Positions 8,457-63,300 of a stretch of DNA of 64,000 bases are shown in pieces. The notes below the pieces were generated by a model, which was not told the DNA's origin, searched no databases, and saw only the letters and a list, made by a program, of their open reading frames with translations. The DNA comes from Mobula hypostoma (lineage: Eukaryota): the NCBI RefSeq assembly GCF_963921235.1, contig NC_086100.1, positions 61,504,001-61,568,000 of the forward strand. The letters are read 5' to 3'. The first letter of the stretch is position 1, and the number at the start of each line of letters is the position of its first letter. The position numbers and the translations under genes were made by a program.

Positions 8457-11004
8457 ATAGAAACATAGAAACATAGAAAATAGGTGCAGGAGTAGGCCAT
8501 TCGGCCCTTCGAGCCTGCACCGCCATTTATTATGATCATGGCTGATCCTCCAACTCAGAACCCCACCCCAGCCTTCCCTCCATACCCCCTGACCCCTGTA
8601 GCCACAAGGGCCATATCTAACTCCCTCTTAAATATAGCCAATGAACTGGCCTCAACTGTTTCCTGTGGCAGAGAATTCCACAGATTCACCACTCTCTGTG
8701 TGAAGAAGTTCTTCCTAATCTCGGTCCTAAAAAGCTTCCCCTCTATCCTCAAACTGTGGCCCCTCGTTCTGGACTTCCCCAACATCGGCAACAATCTTCC
8801 TGCATCTAGCCTGTCCAATCCCTTTAGGATCTTATACGTTTCAATCAGATCCCCCCTCAATCTTCTAAATTCCAACGAGTACAAGCCCAGTTCATCCAGT
8901 CTTTCTTCATATGAAAGTCCTGCCATCCCAGGAATCAATCTGGTGAACCTTCTTTGTACTCCCTCTATGGCAAGGATGTCTTTCCTCAGATTGGGGGACC
9001 AAAACTGCACACAATACTCCAGGTGTGGTCTCACCAAGGCCTTGTACAACTGCAGTAGTACCTCCCTGCTCCTGTACTCGAATCCTCTCGCTATAAATGC
9101 CAGCATACCATTCGCCTTTTTCACCGCCTGCTGTACCTGCATGCCCACTTTCAATGACTGGTGTATAATGACACCCAGGTCTCGTTGCACCTCCCCTTTT
9201 CCTAATCGGCCACCATTCAGATAATAATCTGTTTTCCTATTTTTGCCACCAAAGTGGATAACTTCACATTTATCCACATTAAATTGCATCTGCCATGAAT
9301 TTGCCCACTCACCCACCCTATCCAAGTCACCCTGCATCCTCTTAGCATCCTCCTCACAGCTAACACTGCCACCCAGCTTCATGTCATCCGCAAACTTGGA
9401 GATGCTGCATTTAATTCCCTCATCCAAGTCATTAATATATATTGTAAACAACTGGGGTCCCACTAGTCACGCCTGCCATTCTGAAAAGGTCCCGTTTCTT
9501 CCCACTCTTTGCTTCCTGTCTGCTAACCAATTCTCCACCCACACCAATACCTTACCCCCAATACCGTGTGCTTTAAGTTTGCACACTAATCTCCTGTGTG
9601 GGACCTTGTCAAAAGCCTTTTGAAAATCCAAATATGCCACATCCACTGGTTCTCCCCTATCCACTCTACTAGTTACATCCTCAAAAAATTCTGAGATTCG
9701 TCAGACATGATTTTCCTTTCACAAATCCATGCTGACTTTGTCCGATCATTTCACCGCTTTCCAAATGTGCTGTTCTCACATACTTGATAACTGACTCCAG
9801 CAGTTTCCCCACCACCGACGTTAGGCTAACCGGTCTATAATTCCCCGGTTTCTCTCTCCCTCCTTTTTTAAAAAGTGGAACCACCCTCCAATCCTCAGGA
9901 ACTAGTCCAGAATCTAATGAGTTTTGAAAAATTATCACTAATGCATCCACTATTTCTTGGGCTACTTCCTTAAGCACTCTAGGATGCAGACCATCTGGCC
10001 CTGGGGATTTATCTGCCTTCAATCCCTTCAATTTACCTAACACCACTTCCCTACTAACATGTATTTCGCTCAGTTCCTCCATCTCACTGGACCCTCTGTC
10101 CCCTACTATTTCTGGAAGATTATTTATGTCCTCCTTATTGAAGACAGAACCAAAGTAATTATTCAATTGGTCTGCCATGTCCTTGCTCCCCATAATCAAT
10201 TCACCTGTTTCTGTCTGCAGGGGACCTACATTTGTCTTTACCAGTCTTTTCCTTTTTACATATCTATAAAAGCTTTTACAGTCCGTTTTTATGTTCCCTG
10301 CCAGTTTTCTCTCATAATCCTTTTTCCCCTTCCTAATTAAGCCCTTTGTCCTCCTCTGCTGAACTCTGAATTTCTCCCAGTCCTCAGGTGAGCCACTTTC
10401 TCTGGCTAATTTGTATGCTTCTTCTTTGGAATTGATACTATCCCTAATTTCTCTTGTTAGCCATGGGTGCACTACCTTCCTTGATTTATTTTTTTGCCAA
10501 ACTGGGATGAACAATTGTTGTAGTTCATCCATGCAACCTTTAAATGCTTGCCATTGCATATCCACCGTCAATCCTTTAAGTGTCATTTGCCAGTCTATCT
10601 TAGCTAATTCACGTCTCATACCTTCAAAGTTACCCCTCTTTAAGTTCAGAACCTTTGTTTCTGAATTAACTATGTCACTCTCCATCTTAATGAAGAATTC
10701 CACCATATTATGGTCACTCTTACCCAAGGAGCCTCTCACGACAAGATCGCTAATTAACCCTTCCTCATTGCTCAATACCCAGTCCAGAATAGCCTGCTCT
10801 CTAGTTGGTTCCTCGACATGTTGGTTCAAAAAACCATCCCGCATTCATTCCAAGAAATCCTCTTCCTCAGCACCTTTACCAATTTGGTTCACCCAATCTA
10901 CATGTAGATTGAAGTCACCCATTATAACTGCTGTTCCTTTATTGCACGCATTTCTAATTTCCTGTTTAGTACCATCTCCGACCTCACTACTACTGTTAGG
11001 TGGC
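8457..11004 (-). mobile_element. 5'-truncated CR1 LINE (ORF2: end of APE endonuclease + RT), disrupted
   Basis: ORFs 10845-11036 (IMGDFN), 9681-10844 ([16 protein letters not shown]), 9467-9664 (DFQKAFD) and 8555-9463 (KFADD). The GVPQGSVL motif is deleted at about 9462. The 3' microsatellite reads (ATAGAAAC)n on the + strand at 8457-8480. Confidence 0.95.
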
Positions 11005-26977: not shown

Positions 26978-29356
26978 CTAGTTCCAAGGGTTCAGATGGG
27001 GCAGAGTTTGTTAAGTGTATCCAGGATGGATTCCTGTCACAGTATGTTGACAGGCTGACTGGGGGGAATGCCATACTAGATCTAGTACTAGGTAATGAAC
27101 CGGGTCAGGTCACAGATCTCTCAGTGGGTGAGCATCTGGGGGACAGTGACCACCGCTCCCTGGCCTTTAGCATTATCATGGAAAAGGATAGAATCAGAGA
27201 GGACAGGAAAATTTTTAATTGGGGAAGGGCAAATTATGAGGCGATAAGGCTAGAACTTGCGGGTGTCAATTGGGATGATGTTTTTGCAGGGAAATGTACT
27301 ATGGACATGTGGTCGATGTTTAGGGATCTCTTGCAGGATGTTAGGGATAAATTTGTCCCGGTGAGGAAGATAAAGAATGGTAGGGTGAAGGAACCATGGA
27401 TGACAAGTGAGGTGGAAAATCTAGTCAGGTGGAAGAAGGCAGCATACATGAGGTTTAGGAAGCAAGGATCAGATGGGTCTATTGAGGAATATAGGGCAGC
27501 AAGAAAAGAGCTTAAGAAGGGGCTGAGAAGAGCAAGAAGGGGGCATGAGAAGGCCTTGGCGAGTAGGGTAAGGGAAAACACCAAGGCATTCTTCAATTGT
27601 GTGAAGAACAAAAGGATGACAGGAGTGAAGGTAGGACTGATTAGAGATAAAGGTGGGAAGATGTGCCTGGAGGCTGTGGAAGTGAGCGAGTTCCTCAAGG
27701 AATACTTCTCTTCAGTATTCACCAATGAGAGGGAACTTGATGATGGTGAGGACAATATGAGTGAGGTTGATGTTCTGGAGCATGTTGATATTAAGGGAGA
27801 GGAGGTGTTGGAGTTGTTAAAATACATTAGGATGGGTAAGTCCCCGGGGCCTGATGGAATATTCCCCAGGCTGCTCCACGAGGCAAGGGAAAAGTTTGCT
27901 GAGCCTCTTGCTGGGATCTTTATGTCCTTGTTGTCCACGGGAATTGGAGGGAGGCAAATGTTGTCCCCTTCTTCAAAAAATGTAATAGGGATAGTCCTGG
28001 TAATTATAGACCAGTGAGCTTTGTGTCTGTGGTGGGAAAGCTGTTGGAAAAGATTCTTAGAGATAGGGTCTATGGGCATTTAGAGAATCACAGTCAGCGT
28101 GGCTTTGTGAAGGGCAGATCATGTCTAACAAGTCTGATAGAGTTCTTTGAGGAGGTGACCAGGCAGATAGATGAGGGTAGTGCAGTGCATGTGATCTACA
28201 TGGATTTTAGTAAGGCATTTGACAAGGTTCCACAAGGTAGCCTGATTCAGAAAGTCAGAAGGCATGGGATCCAGGGAAGTTTGGCCAGGTGGATTCAGAA
28301 TTGGCTTGCCTGCAGAAGGCAGAGGGTCATGGTGGAGGAAGTACATTCGGATTGGAGAGTTGTGACTAGTGGTGGCCCACAAGGATTGGTTCTGGGACCT
28401 CTACTTTTCATGATTTTTATTAACAACCTGGATGTGGGGGTAGAAGGATGGATTGGCAAGTTTGCAGATGACACGAAGGTTGGTGGTGTTTTGGATAGTG
28501 TAGAGGATTGTCGAAGATTGAAGAGACACATTGATAGGATGCAGAAGTGGGCCGAGAAGTGGCAGATGGAGTTCAACCCGGACAAGTGTGAGGTGGTACA
28601 CTTTGGAAGGACAAACTCCAAGGCAGAGTACAAAGTAAATGGCAGGTTACTTGGTAGTGTGGAGGAATAGAGGGCTCTGGGGGTACATGTCCACAGATCC
28701 CTGAAAGTTGCCTCACAGGTAGACAGGGTAGTTAAGAAAGCTTATGCGGTGTTAGCTTTCATAGGTCGAGGGATAGAGTTTAAGAGTCGCGAGGTAATGA
28801 TGCAGCTCTATAAAACTCTGGTTAGGCCATACTTGGAGTACTGTGTCCAGATCTGGTCGCCTCATTATAGGAAGGATGTGGAAGCATTGGAAAGGGTACT
28901 GAGGAGATTTACCAGGATGTTGCCTGGTTTAGAGTGTATGGATTATGATCAGAGATTAAGGGAGCTACGGATTTACTCTTTGGAGAGAAGGAGGATGAGA
29001 GGAGACATGATAGAGGTGTACAAGATATTAAGAGGAATAGATAGAGTGGATAGCCAGTGCCTCTTCCCCAGGGCACCACCTGCTCAATACAAGAGGACAT
29101 GGCTTTAAGGTAAGGGGTGGGAAGTTCAAGGGGGATATTACAGGAAGGTTTTTTACTCAGAGAGTGGTTGGTGCGTGGAATGCACTGCCTGAGTCAGTGG
29201 TGGAGGCAGATACACTAGTGAAATTTAAAAGACTACTAGACAGGTACATGGAGGAATTTAAGGTGGGGGGGGTTATATGGGAGGCAGGGTTTGAGAGTCG
29301 GCCCAACATTGTGGGCTGAAGGGCCTGTACTGTGCTGTACTATTCTATGTTCTATG
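26978..29356 (+). mobile_element. 5'-truncated CR1 LINE (young subfamily), ORF2 disrupted
   Basis: ORFs 27124-28017, 28014-28670 (DFSKAFD, PQG, KFADD) and 28749-29108. (TTCTATG)n tail. Confidence 0.95.
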
Positions 29357-31603: not shown

Positions 31604-32851
31604 CGTCCGAAATTGCTCGAGTTTTCAAATGCGAAGCCTGTTTCGAATCTACATTTGGGAATAACTGCACGAGTCAAAATCAGACGAGGCGAAACCGACA
31701 GTGTTACGGTATCAGATGGCAACTTCAGAATGTAGATTTCTCTTGATTTATTGGTGCTTCGGGGAAAGGCGCCGAAAAGGTTAAGAAGTTCCATGCACGT
31801 AAATGTGGATTCCTATGTATTTTACGAAACCATTTAAAGTGAATTGTGTGCTTCACTTTAAGATCAGCGTGCCATATATTTAGGCATACCGCTCAATTCA
31901 TGGATAATTAAGTTGCTACCAAATTAAACAATGCGACTCCCAGATCCTTCCCAGCGTTATCGGCGAGATCTCCATTCATCCTTTAGGGCGAGAAAGGTTG
32001 AGCACCACGTCCCCACAACTGGCCCACCTGTTGGTGCCCGCGCACGTAGACTGGAACCAGAAAAGCCGGCAACCGCAAAGGCTGAGTTTGCCAGCATGGA
32101 AAGGCTCAGAAATGTACGCCGGCGTCACCCCTCCATATGGTCCCTAAGTCCAATGGAGGTTGCCGCACATGTGGCAATTACCGATGCCTTAATGAGGCCA
32201 TCATCCCCAATCTTTACCCCGTCCCGCACATCCAAGAAGTTTTGGCATGTTTAGCCGGAAAGTGTTTTTTATTACCAAAGTCAATGTAGTTAGGGTCTAC
32301 CATGAGGTGTCTGTGTGCTCGGAAGACATTGCCAAATCGGCTGTGTTAACCCCATTTGGCATTTTTGAGTTTTTGTACATGCTGCTTGAGCTAAACAATG
32401 CAGCACAGACTTTCCAATGGCTGATGGACTTGGTATTAAAAGACTTAGATTTTCGTTTTGTTTACGTGGATAACATATTTATCGCCAGCGCATCCAAACC
32501 CAAACGCGTATTCATCTCTGCGCACTCTTCAAGCACTGAAACCAACAGCGATTGATTATTCACCCTGCTAAATGCCAGTTTGGGTTGTCAAGATCCGAAA
32601 TCCACCCCCCCCCCCCGCCCGCCATCAAAAGCAGCCGCTGTTATGGATTTCTCACCACCCTGTACTACTAAAAAACTACAGGAGTTTTTAGTGACCTTCT
32701 ATCACCACTTCTTTCCATGAGCTGCTGAACCCATGCTCCCCCTGTATAGTGCGCTTAAAGGAAATACCCCTTATCAAGTGCTTGACCAGTCAGCGGACAT
32801 GACCAGGGCATTTGATGTTACCAAATCAGCTCTTTCCAATGTGACCCTCCT

Positions 32852-34322
32852 AGTGCACTCACTCCCCGATGCACCCACTCCTGGTGCTCTCACTCCCCGA
32901 TGCACCCACTCCTGGTGCTCTCACTCCCCGATGCACCCACTCCTGGTGCTCTCACTCCCCGATGCACCCACTCCTGGTGCACTCACTCCCCGATGCACTC
33001 AGTCCTGGTGCACTCACTCCCCGATGCACCCAGTCCTGGTGCACCCACTCCCCGATGCACCCACTCCTGGTGCACTCACTCCCCGATGCACCCAGTCCTG
33101 GTGCACCCACTCCCCGATGCACCCAGTCCTGGTGCACTCACTCCCCGATGCACCCACTCCTGGCGCACTCACTCCCCGATGCACCCAGTCCTGGTGCTCT
33201 CACTCCCCGATGCACCCAGTCCTGGTGCACTCACTCCCCGATGCACCCACTCCTGGTGCACTCACTCCCCGATGCACCCACTCCTGGTGCTCTCACTCCT
33301 GGTGCACTCACTCCCTGATGCACCCAGTCCTGGTGCACCCACTGCCCGATGCACCCACTCCTGGTGCACTCACTCCCCGATGCACCCAGTCCTGGTGCAC
33401 CCACTCCCCGATGCACCCAGTCCTGGTGCACTCACTCCCCGATGCACCCACTCCTGGTGCACTCACTCCCCAATGCACCCAGTCCTGGTGCTCTCACTCC
33501 CCGATGCACCCAGTCCTGGTGCACTCACTCCCCGATGCACCCACTCCTGGTGCACTCACTCCCCGATGCACCCACTCCTGGTGCTCTCACTCCTGGTGCA
33601 CTCACTCCCTGATGCACCCAGTCCTGGTGCACCCACTGCCCGATGCACCCAGTCCTGGTGCACCCACTCCCCGATGCACCCAGTCCTGGTGCACTCACTC
33701 CCCGATGCACCCAGTCCTGGTGCACCCACTCCCCGATGCACCCACTCCTGGTGCACCCACTCCCCGATGCACCCAGTCCTGGTGCACCCACTCCCCGATG
33801 CACCCAGTCCTGGTGCACCCACTCCCCGATGCACCCAGTCCTGGTGCACCCACTCCCCGATGCACCCACTCCTGGTGCACCCACTCCCCGATGCACCCAG
33901 TCCTGGTGCACCCACTCCCCGATGCACCCAGTCCTGGTGCACCCACTCCCAGATGCACCCAGTCCTGGTGCACCCACTCCCCGATGCACCCAGTCCTGGT
34001 GCACCCACTCCCCGATGCACCCACTCCTGGTGCACCCACTCCCCGATGCACCCAGTCCTGGTGCACCCACTCCGCACTGCACCCACTCCCGGGTGCACCC
34101 ACTCCCGGGTGCACTCAGTCCCCGATGCACCCACTCCTGGTGCTCTCACTCCCCGATGCACTCACTCCTGGTGCACTCACTCCCTGATGCACCCACTCCT
34201 GGTGCACTCACTTCCTGATGCACCCAGTCCTGGTGCACTCACTCCCTGATGCACCCACTCCTGGTGCACCCACTCCCCGCTGCACCCACTCCCGGGTGCA
34301 CTCAGTCCCCGCTGCACCCACT
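32852..34322. repeat. 31-bp minisatellite (~47 units) inside Gypsy pol
   Basis: Unit GTGCACYCACTCCCCGATGCACCCASTCCTG, itself a 16+15 bp dimer. A diagnostic variant block recurs at 33281 and 33575 (294-bp higher-order period). Confidence 0.97.
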
Positions 34323-43619: not shown

Positions 43620-46466
43620 GTGTCTATTTTAAACATCTATTATGAACAAAGTGGATGAGCTTAGAGCGTGAATCAGCACTTGGAGCTATGATGCTGTAGT
43701 CATTACAGAGACTTGAATGGTGTAGGGGCAGGAATGGCTACTTCAAGTGCCAGGCTTTAGATATTTCAGAAGGGACATGGAGGGAGGCAAAAGAGGTGGA
43801 GGTGTGGCACTATTGATCAGAGATAGTGTCACAGCTGCAGAAAAGAAGGAAGTCATGGACAGGTTGTCTACGGAGTCTCTGTGGGTGGAAGTTAGGAATA
43901 GCAAGGGGTCAATAACTCTACTGGGTGTTTTTTATAGACCACCCAATAGTAACAGGGACATTGAGGAAAAGATAGGGAGACAGATTCTGCAAAGGTGTAA
44001 CAATAATAGGGTTGTTGTAGTGGGAGATTTTAATTTCCCAAATATAGATTGGCATCTCCTTAGAATGAGGGGTTTAGATGGGGTGGAGTTTGTTAGGTGT
44101 GTTCAGGAAGGCTTCTTGACACAATATGTAGAAAAGCCTACAAGAGGAGAGGCTGTACTTGATCTGATATTGGGAAATGAACCTGGTCAGGTGTCAGGTC
44201 TCTCAGTAGGAGAGCATTTTGGAGATAGTGATCATAATTCTATCTCCTTTACCATAGCATTGGAGAGGGATAGGAACAGACAAGTCAGAGAAATGTTTAA
44301 TTGGAGTAAGGGGAAATATGAGGCTATCAGGCAGGAACTCGGAAGCATAAATTAGAAACAGGTGTTCTCAGGGAAATGTATGGAAGAAATGTGGCAAGTG
44401 TTCAGGGGATATTTGTGTGGGGTTCTGCATAGGTACTTTCCAATGAGACAGGGAAAGGATGGTAGGGTACAGGAACTGTGGTGTACAAAGGCTGTTGTAA
44501 ATTTAGTCAAGAAGAAAAGAAGAGCTTACGAATGGTTCCAAAAACCAGGGAATGATAGAGATCTAGAAGATTATAAAGCTAGCAGGAAGGAGCTTAAGAA
44601 TGAAATTAGGAGAGCCAGAAGGGGCCATGAGAAGGCCTTGGCAGAAAGGATTAAGGAAAACCCCAAGGCATTCTACAAGTATGTGGAAAGCAAGAGGATA
44701 GGACATGAGAGAATAGGACCAATTAAGTGTGACAGTGGAAAAGTGTGTATGGAACCGGAGGAGATAGCTAAGGTACTTAATGAATACTTTACTTAAGTAT
44801 TCACTATGGAAAAGGATCTTGGCAATTGTAGGGATGATTTGCAGCAGACTGAAAAGCTGGAGCATGTAGATATTAAGGAAGAGGATGTGCTGGAGATTTG
44901 GAAAGCATTAAGTTGGAAAAGTCACCGGAACCAGATGGGATGTACCTCAGGCTATGGTGGGAAGCGAGGGAGGAGATTGCTGAGCCTCTAGCGATGATCT
45001 TTGTGTTATCAATGAGGACAGGAGAGGTTCCAGAGGATTGGAGCATTGCAGATGTTGTTCCCTTATTTAAGAAAAGGAGGAGAGATAGCCCAGGAAATTA
45101 TAGACCAGTGAGTCTTACTTCAGTGGTTGGTAAGCTGATGGAGAAGATCCTGAGAGACAGGATTTATGAACATTTGGAGAGGCATGATGTGATTAGGAAT
45201 AGTCAGCATGGCTTTGTCAAAGGTAGGTCATGCCTTACGAGCCTGATTGAATTTTTTGAGGATGTGACTAAACACATTGATGAAGGTAGAGCAGTAGATG
45301 TAATGTATATGAATTTCGGCAAAGCATTTGATAAGGTACCCCATGCCAGGCTTATTGAGGAAGTAAGGAGGCATGGGATCCAAGGGGACATTGCTTTGTG
45401 GATCCAGAATTGGCTTGCCCACAGAAGGCAAAGAGTGGTTGTAGATGGGTCATATTCTGCATGGAGGTCAGTGACTAGTGGTGTGCCTCAGGGATCTGTT
45501 CTGGGACACCTACTGTTCATGATTTTTATAAAGGACCTGGATGAGGAAATGCAATGATGGGTTAGTAAATCTGCTGATGACACAAAGGTTGGGATGTTGT
45601 GGATAGTGTGGAGGGCTGTCAGAGGTTACAGCGGGACATCAAAAGGATGCAAAACTGGGCTGAGAAGTGGTAGATGGAGTTCAACTCAGTTAAGTGTGAG
45701 GTGGTTCATTTTGGTTGGTTAAATATGATGGCAGAATATAACATTAACGGTAAGACTCTTTGCAGTGTGGAAGATCAGAGTCCATAGGACACTCAAAGCC
45801 GCTACGCAGGTTGACTCTGTGGTTAAGAAGGCATACGGCGCATTGGCCTTCATGAACCGTGGGATTGAGTTTAAGAGCCAAGAGGTAATGTTGCAGCTTT
45901 ATAGGACCCTGGTCAGACCCCACTTGGAGTACTGTGCGCAGTTCTGGTCGCCTCACTACAGGAAGGATGTGAAAGCCATAGAAAGTGTGCAGAGGAGATT
46001 TACAAGGATGTTGCCCGGATTGGGGTGCATGCCTTATGAAAATAGGTTCAGTGAATTTGGCCTTTTCTCCTTGGAGCGACAGAGGATGAGAGGTGACCTG
46101 ATAGAGGTGTACAAGATAATGAGAGGCATTGATCATGTAGATAGACAGAGGCTTTTTCCCAGGGCCAAAATGGCTAGCACAAGAGGGTATAGTTTTAAGG
46201 TGCTTGGAAGTAGATACAGAGGAGATGTCAGGGGTAAATTTTTTACGCAGAGAGTGGTGAGTGTGTGGAATGGGCTGCCGGCGGCGGTGGAGGAGGTGGA
46301 AACGATAGGGTCTTTTACGAGACTCCTGGATAGGTATATGGATCTTAGAGAAATAGAGGGCTATGGGTAAGCCTACGTAGTTCTAAGGTAAGGACATGTT
46401 TGGCACAGCTTTGTGGGCTGAAGGGCCTGTATTGTGCGGTAGGCTTTCTATGTTTCTATGTTTCTA
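43620..46466 (+). mobile_element. CR1 LINE with nearly full-length but disrupted ORF2 (APE endonuclease + RT)
   Basis: ITET, GGGVALL, YRPP, VGDFN, SDHN; [24 protein letters not shown]. (TTTCTATG)n tail. Several stops and frameshifts. Confidence 0.95.
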
Positions 46467-49860: not shown

Positions 49861-49972
49861 AAATTTGAAAAAAATCCTCAAAATGATGTCTAATAAAAAG
49901 GGGTTGCATGTTTCTTTTAAAATGCATCAGAGATAAGTGATCATGACAAATGTAAAATAATCCAATGATAAA

Positions 49973-50225
49973 TTTATTTAATAGCTATAAATTATCAGAA
50001 AAAACATATTTTAAAATGTGAATCTCCTTTCTATGTAAGCAGACATGGAGATTGCTTAATATATTATAACAATTATTCCTCAAAAATATAAATAATAAAT
50101 AAATATTTAAATAAATAAATTGCTCCGTGGAGCATTCAGTAAATATCTGATATAAATAGTACAAAAGAAAAGTTAAGGGAACACAATGGTTCTACTGGAT
50201 GGAAAATTTATATATTTTTTCGCAG
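49973..50225 (-). promoter_or_regulatory. IL12A-like 3' UTR: AU-rich elements and poly(A) signal
   Basis: Overlapping ATTTA motifs on the - strand at about 50085-50120. AATAAA on the - strand at 49973-49978. Confidence 0.7.
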
Positions 50226-50411
50226 CTACTCTTCAGTTTGGTGTAGATAGTTCATCACTCTGTTGAATGTGATAGTACGCAATTTGAAGGCCTGTAGGAC
50301 TTTGCACAAAGCCATCCTCTGGGGAAAATCAATGACATCTTTTTCTTCTTCATCTGTTGTTGAACCACCTTCAAGATAAACATCTTCGTAGGTGGAATCT
50401 GAATTAAGAGC
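50226..50411 (-). CDS. IL12A: IL12A-like coding exon 6 (helix D)
   Basis: Acceptor TTTTTCCATAG. ALNSD..FPQRMALCKVLQAFKLRTITFNRVMNYL..stop, compared with human ALNFN..FYKTKIKLCILLHAFRIRAVTIDRVMSYL. Confidence 0.93.
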   Translation of the reverse strand, partial: ALNSDSTYEDVYLEGGSTTDEEEKDVIDFPQRMALCKVLQAFKLRTITFNRVMNYLHQTEE

Positions 50412-53400
50412 CTATGGAAAAATATACTACAATTGGGAAACTGATTTTGTATCATAAATAGTTAATTGATTAGGAGTAGATCAGCATATTTAAGTAAACA
50501 AAGTAAATCTGAAAAGAAAATTAGCTGAGTGTTTTGCTTTTAGCAAATCCAATAGTCAGAAATCAACAAAATTCAAGTTGTACTGTACATAATAATAAAT
50601 TCATATTTATATCTTTAATTAAACTGAACTTGCCAAAACCCAATGATTGGCAAATTCAGGTGTATTAGGAAATTAAACGACTAAACTCATATAAAATAAA
50701 ATAGAAAATAGATACAGGATTAAAGAGGAGAATGAGGTTGGTCAGAAGTCTGAAAAGATGTGAACTGTAATAGATCAAAGGAATGAAGCAAACAATATTT
50801 TAGAAGTTATATGAACTCCACATACGAAAAACTTTCAAACTTTACTGATTAAAAAATAATTCTGAACACAAGAGATTCTACAGGTGCTGGAAATCCAGAG
50901 CAACACACACAAACTGCAGGAGGAACTGCAGGTCAGGTAGAATGAATGAAACTTATGTTACAGAAATGAATAAAAAGTCACCATTTCAGGCCAAGATCCT
51001 TCCTCAGGACAACCCTAGGAACACCTAGATCTGTGGAAAGAAAAACAGAGCTGGTATTTCAAGTAAAAGACCCTATATTTGAACTGGGAAACAGATTTTC
51101 TCTCTTTTCCAGTTCAAACAAAGGGTATTTGGCCTGAAATGCTAACTCTGTTGCTCTTTCCACAGATGTTGCTTGACCTATTGAATATTTTCAGCATTTT
51201 GTTTTTGCTTCAGATTTCTAGTATCTGCAGATTTTTTATAACTTTCATAATCTTTCCTGAACCCTGCCAAACTCATGTCCAAATTATTATAATTGTTTTA
51301 AAAACCTACATTTGGCATGTCCTTGTATATGCAATGGAACTATAGCATTCATCTGCTTGGCTAAACTTATTAGTCTTTGGAAGTTCTTGCGGCCTCCCTG
51401 GACAGACGATGACATCAGCAAATGCACAGACAAATGTGAAACAAAGAAAGGTAATAGCAGTAATAATTCATGCATATTGAACTTTGTAGAAAAATACATT
51501 TTTATGTGTACAAGCTTATGCAGCTTGAGTCTTGATATTATTCAGCTCTGTGACACCTTGTGTTCATGTTCAGACTCGTGTAAGGGTTGTAAAATTACTT
51601 ATAGAGTGGTGACTGAAATTATTCCAGAAGGCAGAACCTTAGATGGCTGATGGAAAGCCCAACAATTTTAATGAGAAGCACAAGGAAGATTGAATCGAAA
51701 GGGATGGTAGATTGCGGGGGAGAAGATATGGATCTGGGAGAGGTTACAGATGTTGCAAGGAGTGAACTTGATGAGGGATTTAAATTAATTTAAGATTTAT
51801 ATTTAAAGAAATTGGCAAACTAAATAATGCAGATCAGTAAAATGGGTAAACTAAATTAGTTTCAGAACACAATATGGACTGTATGATACTGTCTAAGTTG
51901 ATGTTTAAGGGAAATGGAGAGTGCAAATCTGCTCAATATATGACTATGAAGCATTAGATAAAAATATAAGAAAAAGCATAACTTAGACATACAGCAGAGA
52001 GATAGCTGAGACAACTCATGTTATTGAGACAAAACCATGTGGTCTGTGCATTGGAGAGAACGGAAGCTTAAATCAGAATTAAACAGAACGTAGAGCTTGC
52101 AAATGGTCTCGTCAGACTGAAAAGTAGCAGATATCATATATCCTCCTTCATCTGAGGCCCGTCAGGTCACAACACTTCAAGTACAGGCAGAGTATTTAGA
52201 ACTCACATCAGCGCCAGATTTAAAAAAAAGTTCTTGTCTCTCCTATAATCATTCAGCCAATTATTTTAAATCTATGCTCCCTGATTCTTTTCAATGAAAT
52301 AGATCCTTTTTATTTATTCTTTCCAGGCCCCTCATAATTTTATACATCTCAATTGTCTCTCCTTGGCCTCCACTTTCCCAACAAAATCAAGCCTGAATAA
52401 TGTCATTTTTCCTTATAACCAATATTTTCTAGATTTGGCATGGTTTCCATAAATCATCCCTATGCCTCTTATAATGCAATCTTTTTTTCCTGTAATATGG
52501 TCGCTAATACTCTATACTTAATGTTTAAGTTGTAGCTTAACTTATCATGAGCCTTTGGGGTGTGGACCTGTATTTGTTAATTGGTGTCTTATCCAGAATC
52601 TTTAAATCCTGTGCTGTTTAATCTTTTCAGGATTATTTTGACTAGCACGGGTTTCCCCACCTACAGTGATTACTTAAAGTGGGCTCCTGATTCGCACTTA
52701 TTGTAGGGTCCTTGTTTGAGAATGATACATCTCACAGTATCACCTAGTCAAGCCACCAATGTTCTGCTGGAATTTCTATGAATGAACTTTTGTTGTTGTC
52801 TCTACATGGGAGACTGCCATTCCTCTGCACTGAGTTCACTCATCTGTCAGCACACACTGTGACATAACTAGTATTGACTATAGTTCTAGTAGTCTGATAT
52901 TGTGTTTAATGCCTTGACTAAAAGTGGATCATATAGCTTTTTAACCATATTAATGGTATGATGTATTATCTTTAATGATTAATGTACAAAAACTCCAGGG
53001 CTTCTTTATTTTCAACATTCAATATTCCTACATCTATTTATATTCATTTTTCTATGGTACTTTCTCATTACTTTATACTTTTCTGGATTAAATTCCCTTT
53101 CCCTTTGATCAAACCATGAAAGTCCCACTGCAATCAAAAGCTTTCCTCCTCATTGTCAACCACAGCCAATTTTGTACAATTAGCAAAATTTGATCCTGTC
53201 TCGTACCTTTCAAGCTTAATCATTGGAATATGTTAGATGACACTCAGGATTGAGGACTATGGAATCCAACTGATAACAGATCTCTAGTCACATAAATTAT
53301 CCTTTACTTTCTACCAACAATGAATTTTATTTTTCAGTTTAACTCCCTTTTTTGACTTTTTGAACTAGTCAGCCATGTGGGACCATATCAAAAACTAAAC

Positions 53401-55769
53401 ACCATGCAGATGACACTGAATGCACAACCCTACTGACCCCAAGCTTACCTCAAAAAAGAATCAATCATATATGTCAGATAATATCTTCCTATAAAATCAT
53501 GTTAGTACATATTTCCATTGAAAATTAAGACATACTATTTCTTAGAATAGGCTGTAATAATTTTCCTCACTATTCAACTAACTGGCTTATTTATACCTTT
53601 CTCTCTGTTTAAACAACATTAAATGTTAGAGTACAATGTTACTAACCAATGTTTTCCAACCATTTGGAATCTCTCCTGTAGCTAAGGAGTTCTAGAAAAT
53701 TGCTGTCAGAACCTCAGCAATAGTTTTTCATGCTTCTTTTAACAGTCTGGCGGAAAAATAACTCAAATGGACCTGCTGATAATTTCTACTTTCAGAGATG
53801 CTACACTTCCTACTTTCAACTTTATCATGTCGATCCCATCCAGTGTTTTCACTTACTATTATCATCCCGTCCAGTATTTTAGTGAAGGTACAAACTTTGT
53901 GATGGATGAAGATGATGGTGTTGGTCATAATTTAGGTGGAAAATAGTGCAACCATTCCAAGCCTAAATTCCTAACAATGGTTGGTAGGACTGAGGGTAGA
54001 ATATGTTGTTGTGAGGAGATGTGATGCCTAGATGGAGCTGGTGTCAAGACTGTATGCGTGGAAGCCATTCACTGAATGTGATACCAAATTAACAGAAAAC
54101 GTGGACAATGGTAATTCCTAAAGCAATTCTGTACAGGATTGTTTGGGATGGAAAGGAAACCATTGCAAGCGATATGCCAACAATAGTTCATTGAGTCAAA
54201 GCAGAGAAAAAAGTAGAAAAACAGTATGTTGGAGAAGCTTATTACGAGAGATAAGGCACAATCACAATTAGAACACACGGGGAAGTGGTAGTGTCGGGCG
54301 CATACTTTTGAAGACAACGATTCTATTATTAGTCTTGTAGAGTGAAGCCGGAGAAGCGGTGGTCTTTAGATGAGTTCAGATGCTGAGGATTTGATTTTCT
54401 TGTTAAGACTGGAAAAACAGACTAACTAAAGCAAAGGGATTATTTACTGCGTCTTTTAGATTGATAACCGGGTGGCGTTGCAAGTGGGCTGGACTCAGTA
54501 GTGACGGGCTGTGTCTTGAAACATACCAACGTCTCGCAACATACTTTCATTTTAGCTTCATTCGAAAATGGAACCCTCTCTGTACTTTAAGAAATCTACT
54601 AAACGAAAGACTGGATTTTTTTTGGCATGTTGTCGACTTTCCAATATTTGCAGGGATTTTCTTGGAGTTTCGGAGTTCATACAATTCTTGTAAAGAAATA
54701 AACTTAAATTTGTGGATTTTTAAGTTTACCTTTAAGAGTGCAGCTATCTTCTTGCACACGTTATTGGTGACATGGGTGAAGTTCTGTAGTTTAGCCTGGT
54801 AAATCCGCAGGTCCGCGGAGATGTTTTGGTAGCACTGTGGGTAAAAATGTACGCGGCATTACATTGGACGCAATTTAAATCAGCGACTGAGATGAAAGTT
54901 AAAATTTGCATTCCTATACCTGGCTGGATCGGAGGCAGTTCAGGCGATTTCCACTTTCCTTGCATCTACTGGACTCCTGCAGATTTACAGAGACAACATG
55001 AGTTTGGGATGGTTTGACCATTAAACGATCTCGTGGCCAGATTATGCAGTACAGTACTCGCTCACCTGCTCCGGGGTACAAGCCCACAGAGTGCTGGTAT
55101 GATTCGCTGTGATGTCTTCCAGTACAATCTCAGTGTCGCTGCAGTTAAACCCTTCAGTCACATCGGGCTGATAGAGAACAACAGGTTTACATTTCCAAAA
55201 GTACAACAGAAGCCATTGAACAGAAAATTACGCATCTTTCTCCCTTGATTGAAGCTAACGAGCCACAAGTAAAACAGAACTCATTTCAGAACTCTGATAA
55301 AAGACGAATCACTTATGACCCAGCCCTGCCTGCGCTTCTCCGCAAAGATTTATGAAAGATCGATTCTCTGCATTTCGCCGGACTCCCAGCTTGAACCGCG
55401 CACCGTGGAATTATGTAGTACTCACGTGCATTAGACTCTCCTTAACTTCTTCGAGTAACATTTTTGAAATATTCAGGCATACCCCAACATCTATTTTATG
55501 ATATTTTTCAATCGGACTCCCAAAGGAGAAGCAGGAAAGCTGAATGTAAATCATCAGGATCGCAGCTTTTCGTACTCTGGGAGTTAAACCTGAAATTAAG
55601 AAGAATACAAAGATCTGTCGTGGTAATTGCCGAATCTGTTTAAATCAGACCTTTCACACTTTCAACGTATATTCCTTCAATGATATCGAGTATCTTTCAT
55701 GCTAGATACAACAATGATATAATTCGCGCAATATTCAGACTAACCGATGGCTTCTAGAAACATCATCAT
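50226..55769 (-). CDS. IL12A: Interleukin-12 subunit alpha (p35)-like, full spliced CDS: join(55745-55769, 55426-55589, 55066-55167, 54920-54976, 54730-54834, 50226-50411), 639 nt, 212 aa
   Basis: All introns are GT-AG with matching phases (1,0,0,0,0) and there is no internal stop. Protein: MMMFLEAIGLTPRVRKAAILMIYIQLSCFSFGSPIEKYHKIDVGVCLNISKMLLEEVKESLMHPDVTEGFNCSDTEIVLEDITANHTSTLWACTPEQESSRCKESGNRLNCLRSSQCYQNISADLRIYQAKLQNFTHVTNNVCKKIAALLKALNSDSTYEDVYLEGGSTTDEEEKDVIDFPQRMALCKVLQAFKLRTITFNRVMNYLHQTEE. It matches p35 hallmarks (EDIT...TST..AC.P; I..DL..Y; LC..L.AF..R..T..RVM.YL). Confidence 0.92.
52200..53720 (-). mobile_element. Very degraded CR1-like LINE pieces in IL12A intron 5
   Basis: rc remnants such as FNPEK and V.HGWLVQK, plus YKIMRG..RI near 52340. 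Confidence 0.45.
54730..54834 (-). CDS. IL12A: IL12A-like coding exon 5
   Basis: TTTTTACCCACAG|CYQNISADLRIYQAKLQNFTHVTNNVCKKIAALLK|GTAAAC. Confidence 0.9.
54920..54976 (-). CDS. IL12A: IL12A-like coding exon 4
   Basis: CTGCAG|ESSRCKESGNRLNCLRSSQ|GTATAG. 57 nt, phase 0-0. Confidence 0.78.
55066..55167 (-). CDS. IL12A: IL12A-like coding exon 3
   Basis: TTCTCTATCAG|PDVTEGFNCSDTEIVLEDITANHTSTLWACTPEQ|GTGAGC, compared with human YPCTSEEIDHEDITKDKTSTVEACLP. Confidence 0.92.
55426..55589 (-). CDS. IL12A: IL12A-like coding exon 2 (signal peptide + helix A)
   Basis: TTAATTTCAG|..RKAAILMIYIQLSCFSFG-SP..VCLNISKMLLEEVKESLMH|GTGAGT. Confidence 0.88.
55745..55769 (-). CDS. IL12A: IL12A-like coding exon 1
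   Basis: ATGATGATGTTTCTAGAAGCCATCG|GTTAGT, phase 1. Which ATG is used is uncertain. Confidence 0.72.
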
Positions 55770-55838
55770 TGTGTCGGCCGGCCAGAGAAAACTTGCGTTA
55801 AAGTTCAACTGCACTCTGCTTGCGTTCACAGACCCTGC

Positions 55839-56025
55839 TTTATACTCAGCACGCTCTACACACTTTATAGGCAGTGAGGGGATTTTCCCCCTCCCACCCA
55901 ATCCCGTCATTTTCAATATGGATTCGTGGATTGATCATGGAATGTGAACACAGCAAAAATTCCTTGAAGGCGCTTCATACCTTGTTTACTTTTACATTTC
56001 GTTCTATGCATCGTTTTTCGCTTTC
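55839..56025 (-). promoter_or_regulatory. IL12A-like proximal promoter
   Basis: TATAAA on the - strand at 55839-55844 and 55864-55869. kB site GGGGATTTTCCCC at 55878-55890. ISRE-like GAAAGCGAAA on the - strand at 56016-56025. CpG-rich surroundings. Confidence 0.7.
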
Positions 56026-60339: not shown

Positions 60340-63300
60340 GTGTGGCTAACTGTGGTTAGCAAGAGAAGACAAAGCCAACATAAAAGCCAAAGAGAGGGCA
60401 TATCATAGAACAAAAAATAGTGGGAAGTTAGAAAATTGGAAAATTTTTAAAAACCAATAGAAGGCAACTGAAAAAGTCATTTAGAAGGAAAAGATAGAAT
60501 ACAAAAGTAAGCTAGCCAATAATATTAAAGAGAATACCAAAAGTTTCTTCAGATACACGAAGTGTAAAAGAGAGGTGAGAATGGATATCGGACTACTGGA
60601 ATGGTAGTAATGGGGAGCAAGGAAATGGTGGACAAACTGAATAAGTATTTTGCATTAGTCTTCACTGTGGAAGACACTAACAGTATGTTGGGAGTTCCAG
60701 AGTGTCAGGGATCAGGGGTGTGCAAAGTTGCCATTACTAGGGAGAAAGTTCTTGGGAAATTAAAAATTCTGAAGGTAGATAAATCACCAGTACCAGATAG
60801 TGTACACCCCAGTGTTCCGAAAGAAGTGGCGAAAGAGATTGTGGAGGTATTAGTAATGATCTTTCAAGAATCTCTAGATTCTGAAATGGTTCCAAAAGAC
60901 TGGAAAATTGCAAGTGTCACTCCACTCTTCAAGAAGGGAGGAGAGGAGGAACAAAGGAAATTATAGGCCAGTTTGTCTGACCTCAGTGGTCGTGAAGATG
61001 TTGGAGTCAATTTTTAAGAATTTGGTTTTGGGATACTTGACGGCACATGGCTTTGTGAAGGGCAGATCGTGTCTAACAAGCCTGATAGAGTTCTTTGAGG
61101 AGGTGACCAGGAATATAGATGAGGGTAGTGCAGTGGATGTGATCTATATGGATTTTAGTAAGGCATTTGACAAGGTTCCACATGGTAGGCTTATTCAGAA
61201 AGTTAGAAGGCATGGGATCCAGGGAAGTTTGGCCAGGTGGATTCAGAATTGGCTTGCCTGCAGAAGGCAGAGGGTGGTGGTGGAGGGAGTACATTCCGAT
61301 TGGAGGATTGAGACTAGTGGTGTCCCACAAGGATCTGTTCTGGGACCTTTACTTTTCGTGATTTTTATTAACGACCTGGATGTGGGGGTAGAAGGGTGGG
61401 TTGGCAAGTTTGCAGACGACACAAAGGTTGGTGGTGTTGTAGATAGTGTAGAGGATTGTCAAAGATTGCAGAGAGACATTGATAGGATGCAGAAGTGGGC
61501 TGAGAAGTGGCAGATGGAGTTCAACCCGGAGAAGTGTGAGGTGCTACACTTTGGAAGGACAAATTCCAAGGCAGAGTACAAAGTAAATGGCAGGATACTT
61601 GGTAGTGTGGAGGAGCAGAGGGATCTCGGGGTACATGTCCACAGATCCCTGAAAGTTGCCTCACAGGTGGATAGGGTAGTTAAGAAAGCTTATGGGGTGT
61701 TAGCTTTCATAAGTCGAGGGATAGAGTTTAAGAGTCGCGATGTAATGATGCAGCTCTATAAAACTCTGGTTAGGCCACACTTGGAGTATTGTGTCCCGTT
61801 CTGGTCACCTCACTATAGGAAGGATGTGGAAGCACTGGAAAGGGTACAGAGAAGATTTACCAGGATGCTGCCTGGTTTAGAATGTACGCATTATGATCAG
61901 AGATTAAAGGAGCTAGGGCTTTACTCTTTGGAGAGAAGGAGGATGAGAGGAGACATGATAGAGGTGTGCAAGATAATAAGAGGAATAGATAGAGTGGATA
62001 GCCAGCACCTCTTCCCCAGGGCACCACTGCTCAATACAAGAGGACATGGCTTTAAGGTAAGGGGTGGGAAGTTCAAGGGGGATATTAGAGGAAGGTTTTT
62101 TACTCAGAGAGTGGTTGGTGCATGGAATGCACTGCCTGAGTCAGTGGTGGAGGCAGATACACTAGTGAAGTTTAAGAGACTACTAGACAGGTATATGGAG
62201 GAATTTAAGGTGGGGGCTTATATGGGAGGCAGGGTTTGAGGGTCGGCACAACATTGTGGGCCAAAGGGCCTGTACTGTGCTGTACTATTCTGTGTTCTAT
62301 GTTCTATAAATAGGCTGTAGTCAGCATCGTTTCCTCAAGGGAAAATCTTGCCTGACAAATCTGTTGGAATTCTTTGAAGACATAATAAGCAAAATAGACA
62401 AAGGAGAATTGGTTGATGTTGTGTTCTTGGATTTTAAGAAGGTCTTTGATAAGGTGCTGCCCATAAGGCTGCTTAACATTTAAGAGCCCACAGTACTACA
62501 GGAACATGCTAGCATGATTAAAACAGTGGCTAATTGACAAGAGGCAAAGAGTGGGAGTAAAGAGACTTTACTGGTTGGCTGCCGGAAACTAGTGGTATTC
62601 CATAGGGGTCTATGTTGGGACTGCTTCACTTTACATTGTATATGTCAACAACTTGGATAATGGAATTGATGGCTTTGTTGCAAAGTTTGTGGACAACACA
62701 AAGATAGGTGGAGGGTCCGGTAGTCTTGAGGAAGTAGAGCAGCTACAAATGGACTTAGACAGACTACGAGGATGGGCAAAGAAAAGGCAGTTCTTGTGCA
62801 GGACTCCCTAAAGGTTAATTCGCAGGTTGAATCTGGGTGAGGAAGGCAAATGCAATATTAGCACTCATTTCAAGAGGACTTGAATGTAAAAGCAAGGATT
62901 TAATGTTGAGGCTTTATAAAGCACTGGTGAAAACTCACGTGAGGTATTGTGAGCATTTTTGTGCCTCTTAGAAAGGATGTGCTGACACTGGAAAGGGTTA
63001 AAGGAGGTTCACAAAAATGATTTCAGGATTGAATGACTTGCATATGAAGTATTTGATGGCTCTCAACCTGTACTCACTAGAATTCAGAAGAATGAAGGAT
63101 GATCTGATTGAAACCTATCGAGTGGCGAAAGGTCTTGATAGAGTGGATGTGGAGAGGATGTTTCCTCTGTTGGGACAGTCTAGGACCAGAGAACACAGCC
63201 TCAGAATCGAGGCGTCCTTTTAGAATGGAGATCAGGAGGAATATTCTTTAGCCAGAGAATAGCGAATCTGTGGAATTCGTTGCCACAGACAGCTGTGGAG

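What the first reader, a model, noticed from the sequence alone, without database searches (positions are those of the whole stretch)
50226..55769. Complete IL-12 p35 gene hidden from the ORF track
Seen: six GT-AG exons splice into an uninterrupted 212-aa secreted-type protein with five N-glycosylation sequons (NIS twice, NCS, NHT, NFT). Established: human p35 has seven Cys, including the interchain Cys96, and Arg211 in TIDRVM is needed for p40 pairing. By manual alignment all seven Cys, the Arg (TFNRVM) and an aromatic residue at the start of helix D (F for Tyr189) have counterparts. Inference: a functional Th1-type cytokine chain able to pair with p40 (or EBI3) in a probable cartilaginous fish, relevant to the early evolution of T-helper cytokines.
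Basis: partly seen in the sequence, partly recalled or inferred. Interest (0 to 1): 0.8.

Follow-up and report, generated by a model that had tools for sequence, protein, structure and literature searches.

The report
Devil ray IL-12 p35 gene, already annotated
This is a real, spliced and transcribed gene for the p35 chain of the immune messenger interleukin-12 in a devil ray, but public databases already hold exactly this protein under that name, so it is an ordinary find.

Summary
Spliced contigs in small runs that the tool guesses to be RNA show all five junctions. Two come from the window's own species and four from a sister species.

The product is 100% identical to the RefSeq protein "interleukin-12 subunit alpha [Mobula hypostoma]". 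NCBI annotates the same gene in 15 cartilaginous-fish species.

- **Family:** Pfam IL12 scores 57 bits against a cut-off of 25. Sequence searches of solved structures find only p35 with support. The predicted fold ranks p35 ahead of p19 and p28.
- **Key residues:** all seven human cysteines and the helix-D arginine have counterparts.
- **Location:** SCHIP1 lies 131 kb upstream in the same orientation.

So the reading as p35 is right, but a p35 orthologue in cartilaginous fish was already published (PMC6238376). Pairing with p40 was not tested. Both p40-like genes in this genome carry Ser where human p40 has the interchain Cys, which is a minor open point.

The parts
55745..55769 (-). Exon 1 (25 nt), with the ATG at 55769-55767. 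It encodes the first 8 residues and the first base of codon 9.
   Evidence: The exon 1/2 junction is seen in contig record 7 of X20, from the same organism (joint 55586/55742, cut +3).
55426..55589 (-). Exon 2 (164 nt). It covers the hydrophobic signal-peptide core (about residues 17-32), the start of helix A, Cys46 and sequon NIS48.
   Evidence: Junction 55167/55426 is seen in X20 and X25.
55066..55167 (-). Exon 3 (102 nt). It holds Cys72, Cys93 and sequons NCS71 and NHT85.
   Evidence: This piece alone scores 20.3 bits on Pfam IL12, profile positions 55-83. Junction 54975/55065 is seen in X25.
54920..54976 (-). Exon 4 (57 nt). It holds Cys102, the counterpart of the human interchain Cys74 (mature) or Cys96 (precursor), and Cys111.
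   Evidence: Junction 54834/54920 is seen in X25 and X26.
54730..54834 (-). Exon 5 (105 nt). It holds Cys117, the long central helix, sequons NIS120 and NFT134, and the extra Cys143.
   Evidence: Junction 50410/54729, which skips 4318 nt, is seen in X25 and X26.
50226..50411 (-). Exon 6, coding part (186 nt including the TAG stop). It encodes the C-D loop and helix D, with Phe180, Cys187 and Arg202 in TFNRVM.
   Evidence: This piece alone scores 26.0 bits on Pfam IL12. Its only PDB matches are p35, E 8e-4. X20 contig 50133-50401 matches without any difference.
49973..50225 (-). 3' UTR. It holds 10 ATTTA pentamers. Six fall in an overlapping AU-rich cluster at 50089-50120. The ATTAAA/AATAAA signals lie at 49982-49973, starting 243 and 247 nt after the stop.
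   Evidence: the window average is 2.1 ATTTA per kb per strand. An RNA-type contig covers the stretch down to 50133. That the element controls mRNA stability is inferred.
55839..55888 (-). Putative core promoter. A NF-kappaB consensus GGGATTTTCC lies at 55879-55888. Two TATAAA boxes lie at 55869-55864 and 55844-55839, 70 to 120 nt upstream of the ATG.
   Evidence: The kappaB pattern is not enriched in the window (11 found, 8.8 expected), so this is a lead only.

Best explanation
This is the single-copy IL12A gene, which encodes interleukin-12 subunit alpha (p35), of a devil ray. The species is most probably Mobula hypostoma.

Shown here: six exons are spliced into an mRNA for a 212-aa precursor, and the predicted fold is a long-chain four-helix bundle.

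Inferred by orthology, not tested:
- The precursor has an N-terminal signal peptide and is N-glycosylated and secreted.
- It assembles in the ER with a p40 (IL12B) chain. The helix-D arginine (Arg202) inserts into p40.
- The heterodimer signals through IL-12R beta1/beta2 and STAT4 to drive IFN-gamma, Th1-type responses.
- It may also pair with EBI3.
- AU-rich elements in the 3' UTR probably keep the mRNA short-lived, as for other cytokine mRNAs.
For: - **Gene model:** exons, frame and splice sites are as stated. All five junctions appear in spliced contigs from two organisms.
- **Identity:** the product is identical to XP_062903365.1, IL-12 subunit alpha of Mobula hypostoma, and 99.1% identical to that of M. 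birostris. The protein search returned full-length proteins named IL-12 alpha (one 'alpha-like') from 14 sharks, rays and a chimaera; with M. hypostoma that makes 15 species.
- **Family:** Pfam IL12 scores 57.0 bits, E 2.4e-15, over profile positions 31-212 of 214, and no other cytokine family appears at E<=10. In PDB sequence searches p35 chains are the only matches with support. A single sequence gives E 2e-8. A 17-sequence profile gives E 4e-29. No p19, p28 or IL-6 chain is listed.
- **Fold:** the AlphaFold model (pLDDT 70) has p35 chains as its top six Foldseek matches (E 6e-4 to 1.6e-2). IL-23 p19 (0.4) and IL-27 p28 (0.46) come next.
- **Residues:** HMMER aligns ray Cys46/72/93/102/111/117/187 with human mature Cys15/42/63/74/88/101/174, and Arg202 with Arg189. 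Phe180, Arg183, Cys187 and Arg202 are invariant in 19 p35 sequences.
- **Tree:** the protein nests with Mobula birostris, then the stingray Hemitrygon, inside a cartilaginous-fish p35 clade with 99/97 support.
- **Genome context:** the only PF03039 match in the 3.48-Gb genome is exon 6. SCHIP1 exons lie 131 kb upstream on the same strand. From my own knowledge, human SCHIP1 and IL12A sit in the same order and orientation.
- **Partner:** a p40 gene exists at C21:83.953-83.958 Mb, with an Ig exon and two IL12p40_C exons whose only PDB matches are p40.
Against: - No binding, secretion or signalling was tested.
- The runs are only guessed to be RNA. Their intron-less contigs are the argument that they are.
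- Junctions 3 to 5 are seen only in the sister species.
- The AlphaFold model has only moderate confidence; the A-B and C-D loops are poorly predicted.
- Both p40-like genes have Ser at the position of human p40 Cys177, so the mammalian interchain disulfide may not form as such.
- No tree with p19, p28 and IL-6 outgroups was built.
Confidence: 0.96

Rival explanations
1. It is another alpha chain of the IL-6/IL-12 superfamily, such as IL-23 p19, IL-27 p28 or an IL-6/G-CSF-like cytokine, and not p35.
For: All these proteins share the long-chain four-helix-bundle fold. p19, p28 and G-CSF do appear as weaker Foldseek matches, with E 0.4 to 1.
Against: Pfam reports only IL12 at E<=10. PDB sequence and profile searches list no p19, p28 or IL-6 chain, although structures of them are in the bank. 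The p35-specific cysteine pattern and the xxNRVM helix-D motif are present. The gene sits beside SCHIP1. The protein is identical to one that RefSeq names IL-12 alpha.
Confidence: 0.01
2. It is a decaying or non-functional copy that still looks intact: a transcribed pseudogene, or a gene that has lost its partner.
For: No functional data exist. The interchain Cys partner is missing at the aligned position in both p40-like genes.
Against: The frame is intact and all splice sites are canonical. Spliced transcripts are found in two species. Only 2 amino-acid differences separate the product from M. birostris p35, against 9 nucleotide differences in the organism-B contig, if that organism is M. 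birostris. Key residues are invariant across 19 vertebrate p35 sequences. It is the only copy found in the genome. p40 genes are present.
Confidence: 0.03

Closest known systems
RefSeq XP_062903365.1, interleukin-12 subunit alpha [Mobula hypostoma] (and XP_072110700.1, M. birostris)
   Same: The Mobula hypostoma protein is identical over all 212 residues. The M. birostris protein is 210/212 identical.
   Different: Nothing differs. The window simply contains this annotated gene.
Human and mouse IL-12 p35 (IL12A; PDB 1F45, 3HMX, 8XRP, 8CR6)
   Same: Both belong to Pfam family IL12. The seven-cysteine framework, including the interchain Cys, is shared. So are the helix-D Arg in xxxRVM and the four-helix bundle. 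Foldseek TM is 0.55-0.66 at 24-28% identity. SCHIP1 is the upstream neighbour in both.
   Different: - Identity is only about 25-28%.
- The ray protein has an extra unpaired Cys143.
- There are five sequons at non-human positions.
- The ray protein has a shorter B-C region and an acidic C-D loop.
- There are six coding exons with a 4.3-kb last intron.
- The ray p40 candidates lack the Cys177 equivalent.
Cartilaginous-fish p35 described by Redmond et al. 2018 (PMC6238376), and the Th1 toolkit described for the elephant shark by Venkatesh et al. 2014 (PMC3964593)
   Same: It is the same orthologue group. Callorhinchus p35 is 56% identical to the ray protein and falls in the same clade.
   Different: It is a ray (Myliobatiformes) member rather than a chimaera or catshark member. 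There is no conceptual difference.

Membership tests
IL-12 p35 (Pfam PF03039, IL12A orthologue group) | Match to the family profile above the curated threshold, over most of its length | tested here: met
   57.0 bits against a cut-off of 25, E 2.4e-15, profile positions 31-212 of 214, on P0019, which is identical to the window's product. Exon 6 alone scores 26.0 bits.
IL-12 p35 (Pfam PF03039, IL12A orthologue group) | Closer to p35 than to p19, p28, IL-6 or G-CSF | tested here: met
   In PDB phmmer and profile searches only p35 has support, with E down to 4e-29. The top six Foldseek matches are p35; p19 and p28 are about 600 times weaker in E-value than the best p35 match. No outgroup tree was built.
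IL-12 p35 (Pfam PF03039, IL12A orthologue group) | Cysteine framework: three intrachain pairs plus the interchain Cys (human mature C15-C88, C42-C174, C63-C101, C74) | tested here: met
   The HMMER alignment places ray C46, C111, C72, C187, C93, C117 and C102 at these columns. That the disulfides actually form is inferred.
IL-12 p35 (Pfam PF03039, IL12A orthologue group) | Helix-D arginine that inserts into p40 (human mature Arg189, in TIDRVM) | tested here: met
   Arg202 in TFNRVM aligns to it and is invariant in 19 sequences. Its role in the human protein is from my own knowledge of the 1F45 structure.
IL-12 p35 (Pfam PF03039, IL12A orthologue group) | Aromatic residue at the start of helix D that contacts the receptor (human precursor Tyr189) | tested here: inconclusive
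   Phe180 is invariant. HMMER aligns it to the neighbouring human Phe, with a one-residue gap at the Tyr.
IL-12 p35 (Pfam PF03039, IL12A orthologue group) | Conserved genomic position downstream of SCHIP1 | tested here: met
   SCHIP-1_C exons lie at C9:61,691,002-61,776,719 on the minus strand. IL12A starts at C9:61,559,769, also on the minus strand. The human arrangement is recalled, not tested.
IL-12 p35 (Pfam PF03039, IL12A orthologue group) | Transcribed and spliced into the predicted open frame | tested here: met
   All five junctions are seen in intron-less contigs from two organisms.
IL-12 p35 (Pfam PF03039, IL12A orthologue group) | Forms a heterodimer with p40 (IL-12) or EBI3 (IL-35) and signals through IL-12R beta2 | not tested
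   The spliced p40 has no reference that the complex tool would accept, so no complex job was run. A p40 gene is present in the genome.

The most novel reading that the evidence does not exclude
In devil rays IL-12 may be a non-covalent heterodimer, or one with a shifted disulfide. p35 keeps the 'interchain' Cys102. Both p40-like genes, at C21:83.95 Mb and C9:189.89 Mb, have Ser in xSPYAEE at the column of human p40 Cys177. The conserved p35 cysteine might therefore bond to another p40 cysteine (the C21 copy has extra Cys nearby), bond to another partner, or stay free. Carp p40c is a published precedent for a fish p40 without this Cys (PMC2946394).
Probability: 0.3. Interest if true: 0.25.

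Novelty: already known. Interest (0 to 1): 0.08.

Why it matters
It matters little. A p35 orthologue in cartilaginous fish was already reported and used to argue that Th1-type cytokines date to the jawed-vertebrate ancestor (PMC3964593, PMC6238376). This exact protein is already in RefSeq. The value here is as a check: a reader working from raw sequence reconstructed a six-exon cytokine gene correctly, residue for residue. The one small open point is how ray p35 and p40 are linked, given the missing Cys in p40.

Tried and rejected
- **Rest of the window:** I found no other gene. The long ORFs tested are LINE reverse-transcriptase or endonuclease remnants or have no Pfam match. The 484-aa ORF at 32733-34187 is a tandem repeat.
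- **The look-up of encoding contigs for P0019:** it returned nothing, probably because records of the window's own genome are withheld.
- **Earlier notes of this scan:** there were none near this place.
- **p40 last exon:** I aligned the presumed last exon (C21:83964577-83964729) by eye to the human p40 segment that holds the acidic pocket residue for the p35 arginine. Neither phmmer against the PDB nor Pfam supported that exon, so I make no claim about it.
- **kappaB site:** the site upstream of the ATG is a perfect consensus, but the pattern occurs at chance frequency in the window. It is a lead only.
- **Complex prediction:** not run. The ray p40 is a spliced product without a reference, and the protein searches are limited by query length, so exon pieces could not retrieve a full-length p40.
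- **Outgroup tree:** no tree with p19, p28 and IL-6 was built, because I had no tool-derived sequences for them.

Full report
**Observation.** The region 50226-55769 carries a gene on the minus strand. I translated the three minus-strand frames and joined the open pieces at GT/AG sites. This gave six exons:

| Exon | Coordinates | Length |
|---|---|---|
| 1 | 55769-55745 | 25 nt |
| 2 | 55589-55426 | 164 nt |
| 3 | 55167-55066 | 102 nt |
| 4 | 54976-54920 | 57 nt |
| 5 | 54834-54730 | 105 nt |
| 6 | 50411-50226 | 186 nt |

Every intron begins GT and ends AG after a pyrimidine-rich tract. The joined frame is 639 nt, giving 212 codons and a TAG stop. The protein has nine cysteines: C28 in the signal peptide, then C46, 72, 93, 102, 111, 117, 143 and 187.

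**Transcript support.** Two run searches found small runs guessed to be RNA. They come from the organism that also holds 100% of the window's words (organism A) and from a relative holding 54% of them (organism B). I laid four of these runs on 49900-55850.
- X20 (organism A) has a 253-nt contig that joins exon 1 to exon 2 and exon 2 to exon 3. It also has a 269-nt contig over exon 6 and the 3' UTR (50133-50401) with no differences.
- X25 (organism B) has one 561-nt contig that joins exons 2-3-4-5-6. X26 repeats the 4-5 and 5-6 joints.

All joints are CT..AC on the plus strand, which is GT..AG on the minus strand, at the predicted bases. The direct 5-6 joint across 4318 nt rules out a missed exon in the long last intron for that transcript. 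The contigs lack the introns, so the runs hold RNA (or cDNA) of this gene. The depth peaks at 50696-51292 are a repeat inside the last intron, not the gene.

**Identity.**
- Exon 6 alone hit only IL-12 p35 chains in the PDB (E 8e-4).
- Exon 6 alone also passed the Pfam IL12 threshold (26.0 bits), and exon 3 added 20.3 bits at co-linear profile positions.
- An exhaustive phmmer search with exon 6 returned a 213-aa protein that is 78% identical over that exon.
- Searching with that protein returned proteins that NCBI names interleukin-12 subunit alpha (one 'alpha-like') from 14 sharks, rays and the elephant shark.
- My spliced model is 99.1% identical to the Mobula birostris entry.
- My model is 100% identical, over 212 of 212 residues, to its cluster mate XP_062903365.1 of Mobula hypostoma.

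The window therefore most probably comes from Mobula hypostoma (Myliobatiformes).

The full protein scores 57.0 bits on Pfam IL12 (E 2.4e-15), and no other cytokine family is listed at E<=10. Against PDB sequences only p35 chains match with support, with E 2e-8 for one sequence and 4e-29 for a 17-sequence profile. No IL-23 p19, IL-27 p28 or IL-6 chain is listed.

An AlphaFold model built on a 19-sequence alignment has mean pLDDT 70.2. Helices A, C and D score above 90. Its top six Foldseek matches are human and mouse p35 (E 6e-4 to 1.6e-2), followed by p19 (0.4), p28 (0.46), G-CSF and IL-11.

A maximum-likelihood tree of 19 p35 sequences places the window's protein with M. birostris, then the stingray Hemitrygon. 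Both sit inside a well-supported cartilaginous-fish clade (99/97), following the species relationships.

**Residue claims.** The HMMER alignment to human p35 (chain 1F45_B, mature numbering) pairs ray and human cysteines as follows:

| Ray | Human (mature) |
|---|---|
| C46 | C15 |
| C72 | C42 |
| C93 | C63 |
| C102 | C74 |
| C111 | C88 |
| C117 | C101 |
| C187 | C174 |

All seven human cysteines have counterparts, including the interchain one. That residue is precursor C96, and PMC10599630 confirms that C96 bonds to p40 C199. Arg202 in TFNRVM aligns with Arg189 in TIDRVM and is invariant in all 19 sequences. Phe180 is also invariant. HMMER puts it opposite human Phe166, with a one-residue gap at Tyr167, so the proposed Tyr counterpart is plausible but not settled. 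C143 is not conserved among cartilaginous fish and is probably free.

**Context.** The window is G000:C9:61504001-61568000 of a 3.48-Gb assembly, and exon 6 is the only PF03039 match in it. SCHIP1 C-terminal exons lie at C9:61,691,002-61,776,719 on the minus strand. That is 131 kb upstream of IL12A and in the same orientation. From my own knowledge this matches the human SCHIP1-IL12A arrangement. The rest of the window holds LINE fragments and a tandem repeat.

The 3' UTR has ten ATTTA pentamers within about 260 nt, where the window average predicts about 0.5. Six overlap at 50089-50120. The ATTAAA/AATAAA signals lie 243-252 nt after the stop. This is the usual look of an unstable cytokine mRNA, but the function is inferred.

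Upstream of the ATG, a perfect NF-kappaB consensus (55879-55888) sits just before two TATAAA boxes. The pattern occurs at chance frequency in the window, so it is only a lead. Mammalian p35 transcription is c-Rel dependent, according to Grumont et al. 2001, as cited in PMC12043515.

**Partner genes.** PF10420 (IL12p40_C) finds an exon at C21:83957872-83957979. The neighbouring plus-strand open frames include an Ig exon (Ig_3, 31.7 bits) and a second IL12p40_C exon. The exon's 13 PDB matches are all IL-12 p40.

In the ungapped alignment to human p40 residues 161-213, C171 is kept but the interchain C177 column is Ser (…FSPYAEE). A second p40-like exon at C9:189893534-189893680 also reads YSPYAEE. 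Carp p40c likewise lacks this Cys (PMC2946394). Human p35 and p40 that both lack their interchain cysteines still stayed together in cells (PMC10599630). This therefore does not argue against pairing, but the mammalian disulfide may not exist as such in rays. I could not confirm the last p40 exon. I could not run a complex prediction, because the spliced p40 has no reference.

**Verdict.** It is not new. The same protein is in RefSeq, 15 cartilaginous-fish species carry the annotation, and p35 in this lineage is published (PMC6238376; PMC3964593). Function as a p40-pairing, Th1-driving chain is inferred from orthology and conserved residues, not tested.

Noticed in passing
G000:C21:83953267-83960106 (+), loci L010/L002; key exon L002:1456-1695: An IL12B (p40) gene is present, with an Ig exon and two IL12p40_C exons. 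At the column of human p40 Cys177, the interchain Cys, it has Ser (TFSPYAEE). The same exon holds four Cys where I recall three in the human one.
   Followed up: partly
G000:C9:189893534-189893680 (-), locus L012:1417-1764: A second p40-like exon, 43% identical to the C21 copy, lies on the same chromosome as IL12A but 128 Mb away. It also has Ser (YSPYAEE) and lacks the C171 equivalent. It may be a p40 paralogue.
   Followed up: partly
window 50865-51009 (inside the last IL12A intron): A short interspersed repeat draws very high depth and many loose ends from all four RNA-type runs. It is a highly transcribed or highly repeated element, unrelated to IL12A expression.
   Followed up: no
window 32733-34187 (+): A 484-codon open frame with 58% G+C is a tandem array of a unit of about 35 aa (…LPDAPTPGALTPRCTQSWCTHSPMHPVLVH…). 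It has no Pfam match and looks like a minisatellite, not a gene.
   Followed up: partly
window 8558-10844 (-), 27124-28667 (+), 43747-45554 (+), 60908-62236 (+): LINE-type reverse-transcriptase and endonuclease ORF fragments fill much of the flanks. No other cellular gene was seen in the 64 kb.
   Followed up: partly
window 55879-55888 and 55839-55869: A perfect NF-kappaB consensus GGGATTTTCC lies just upstream of two TATAAA boxes, 70-120 nt before the IL12A ATG. It is a plausible core promoter, but the pattern occurs at chance frequency in the window.
   Followed up: partly
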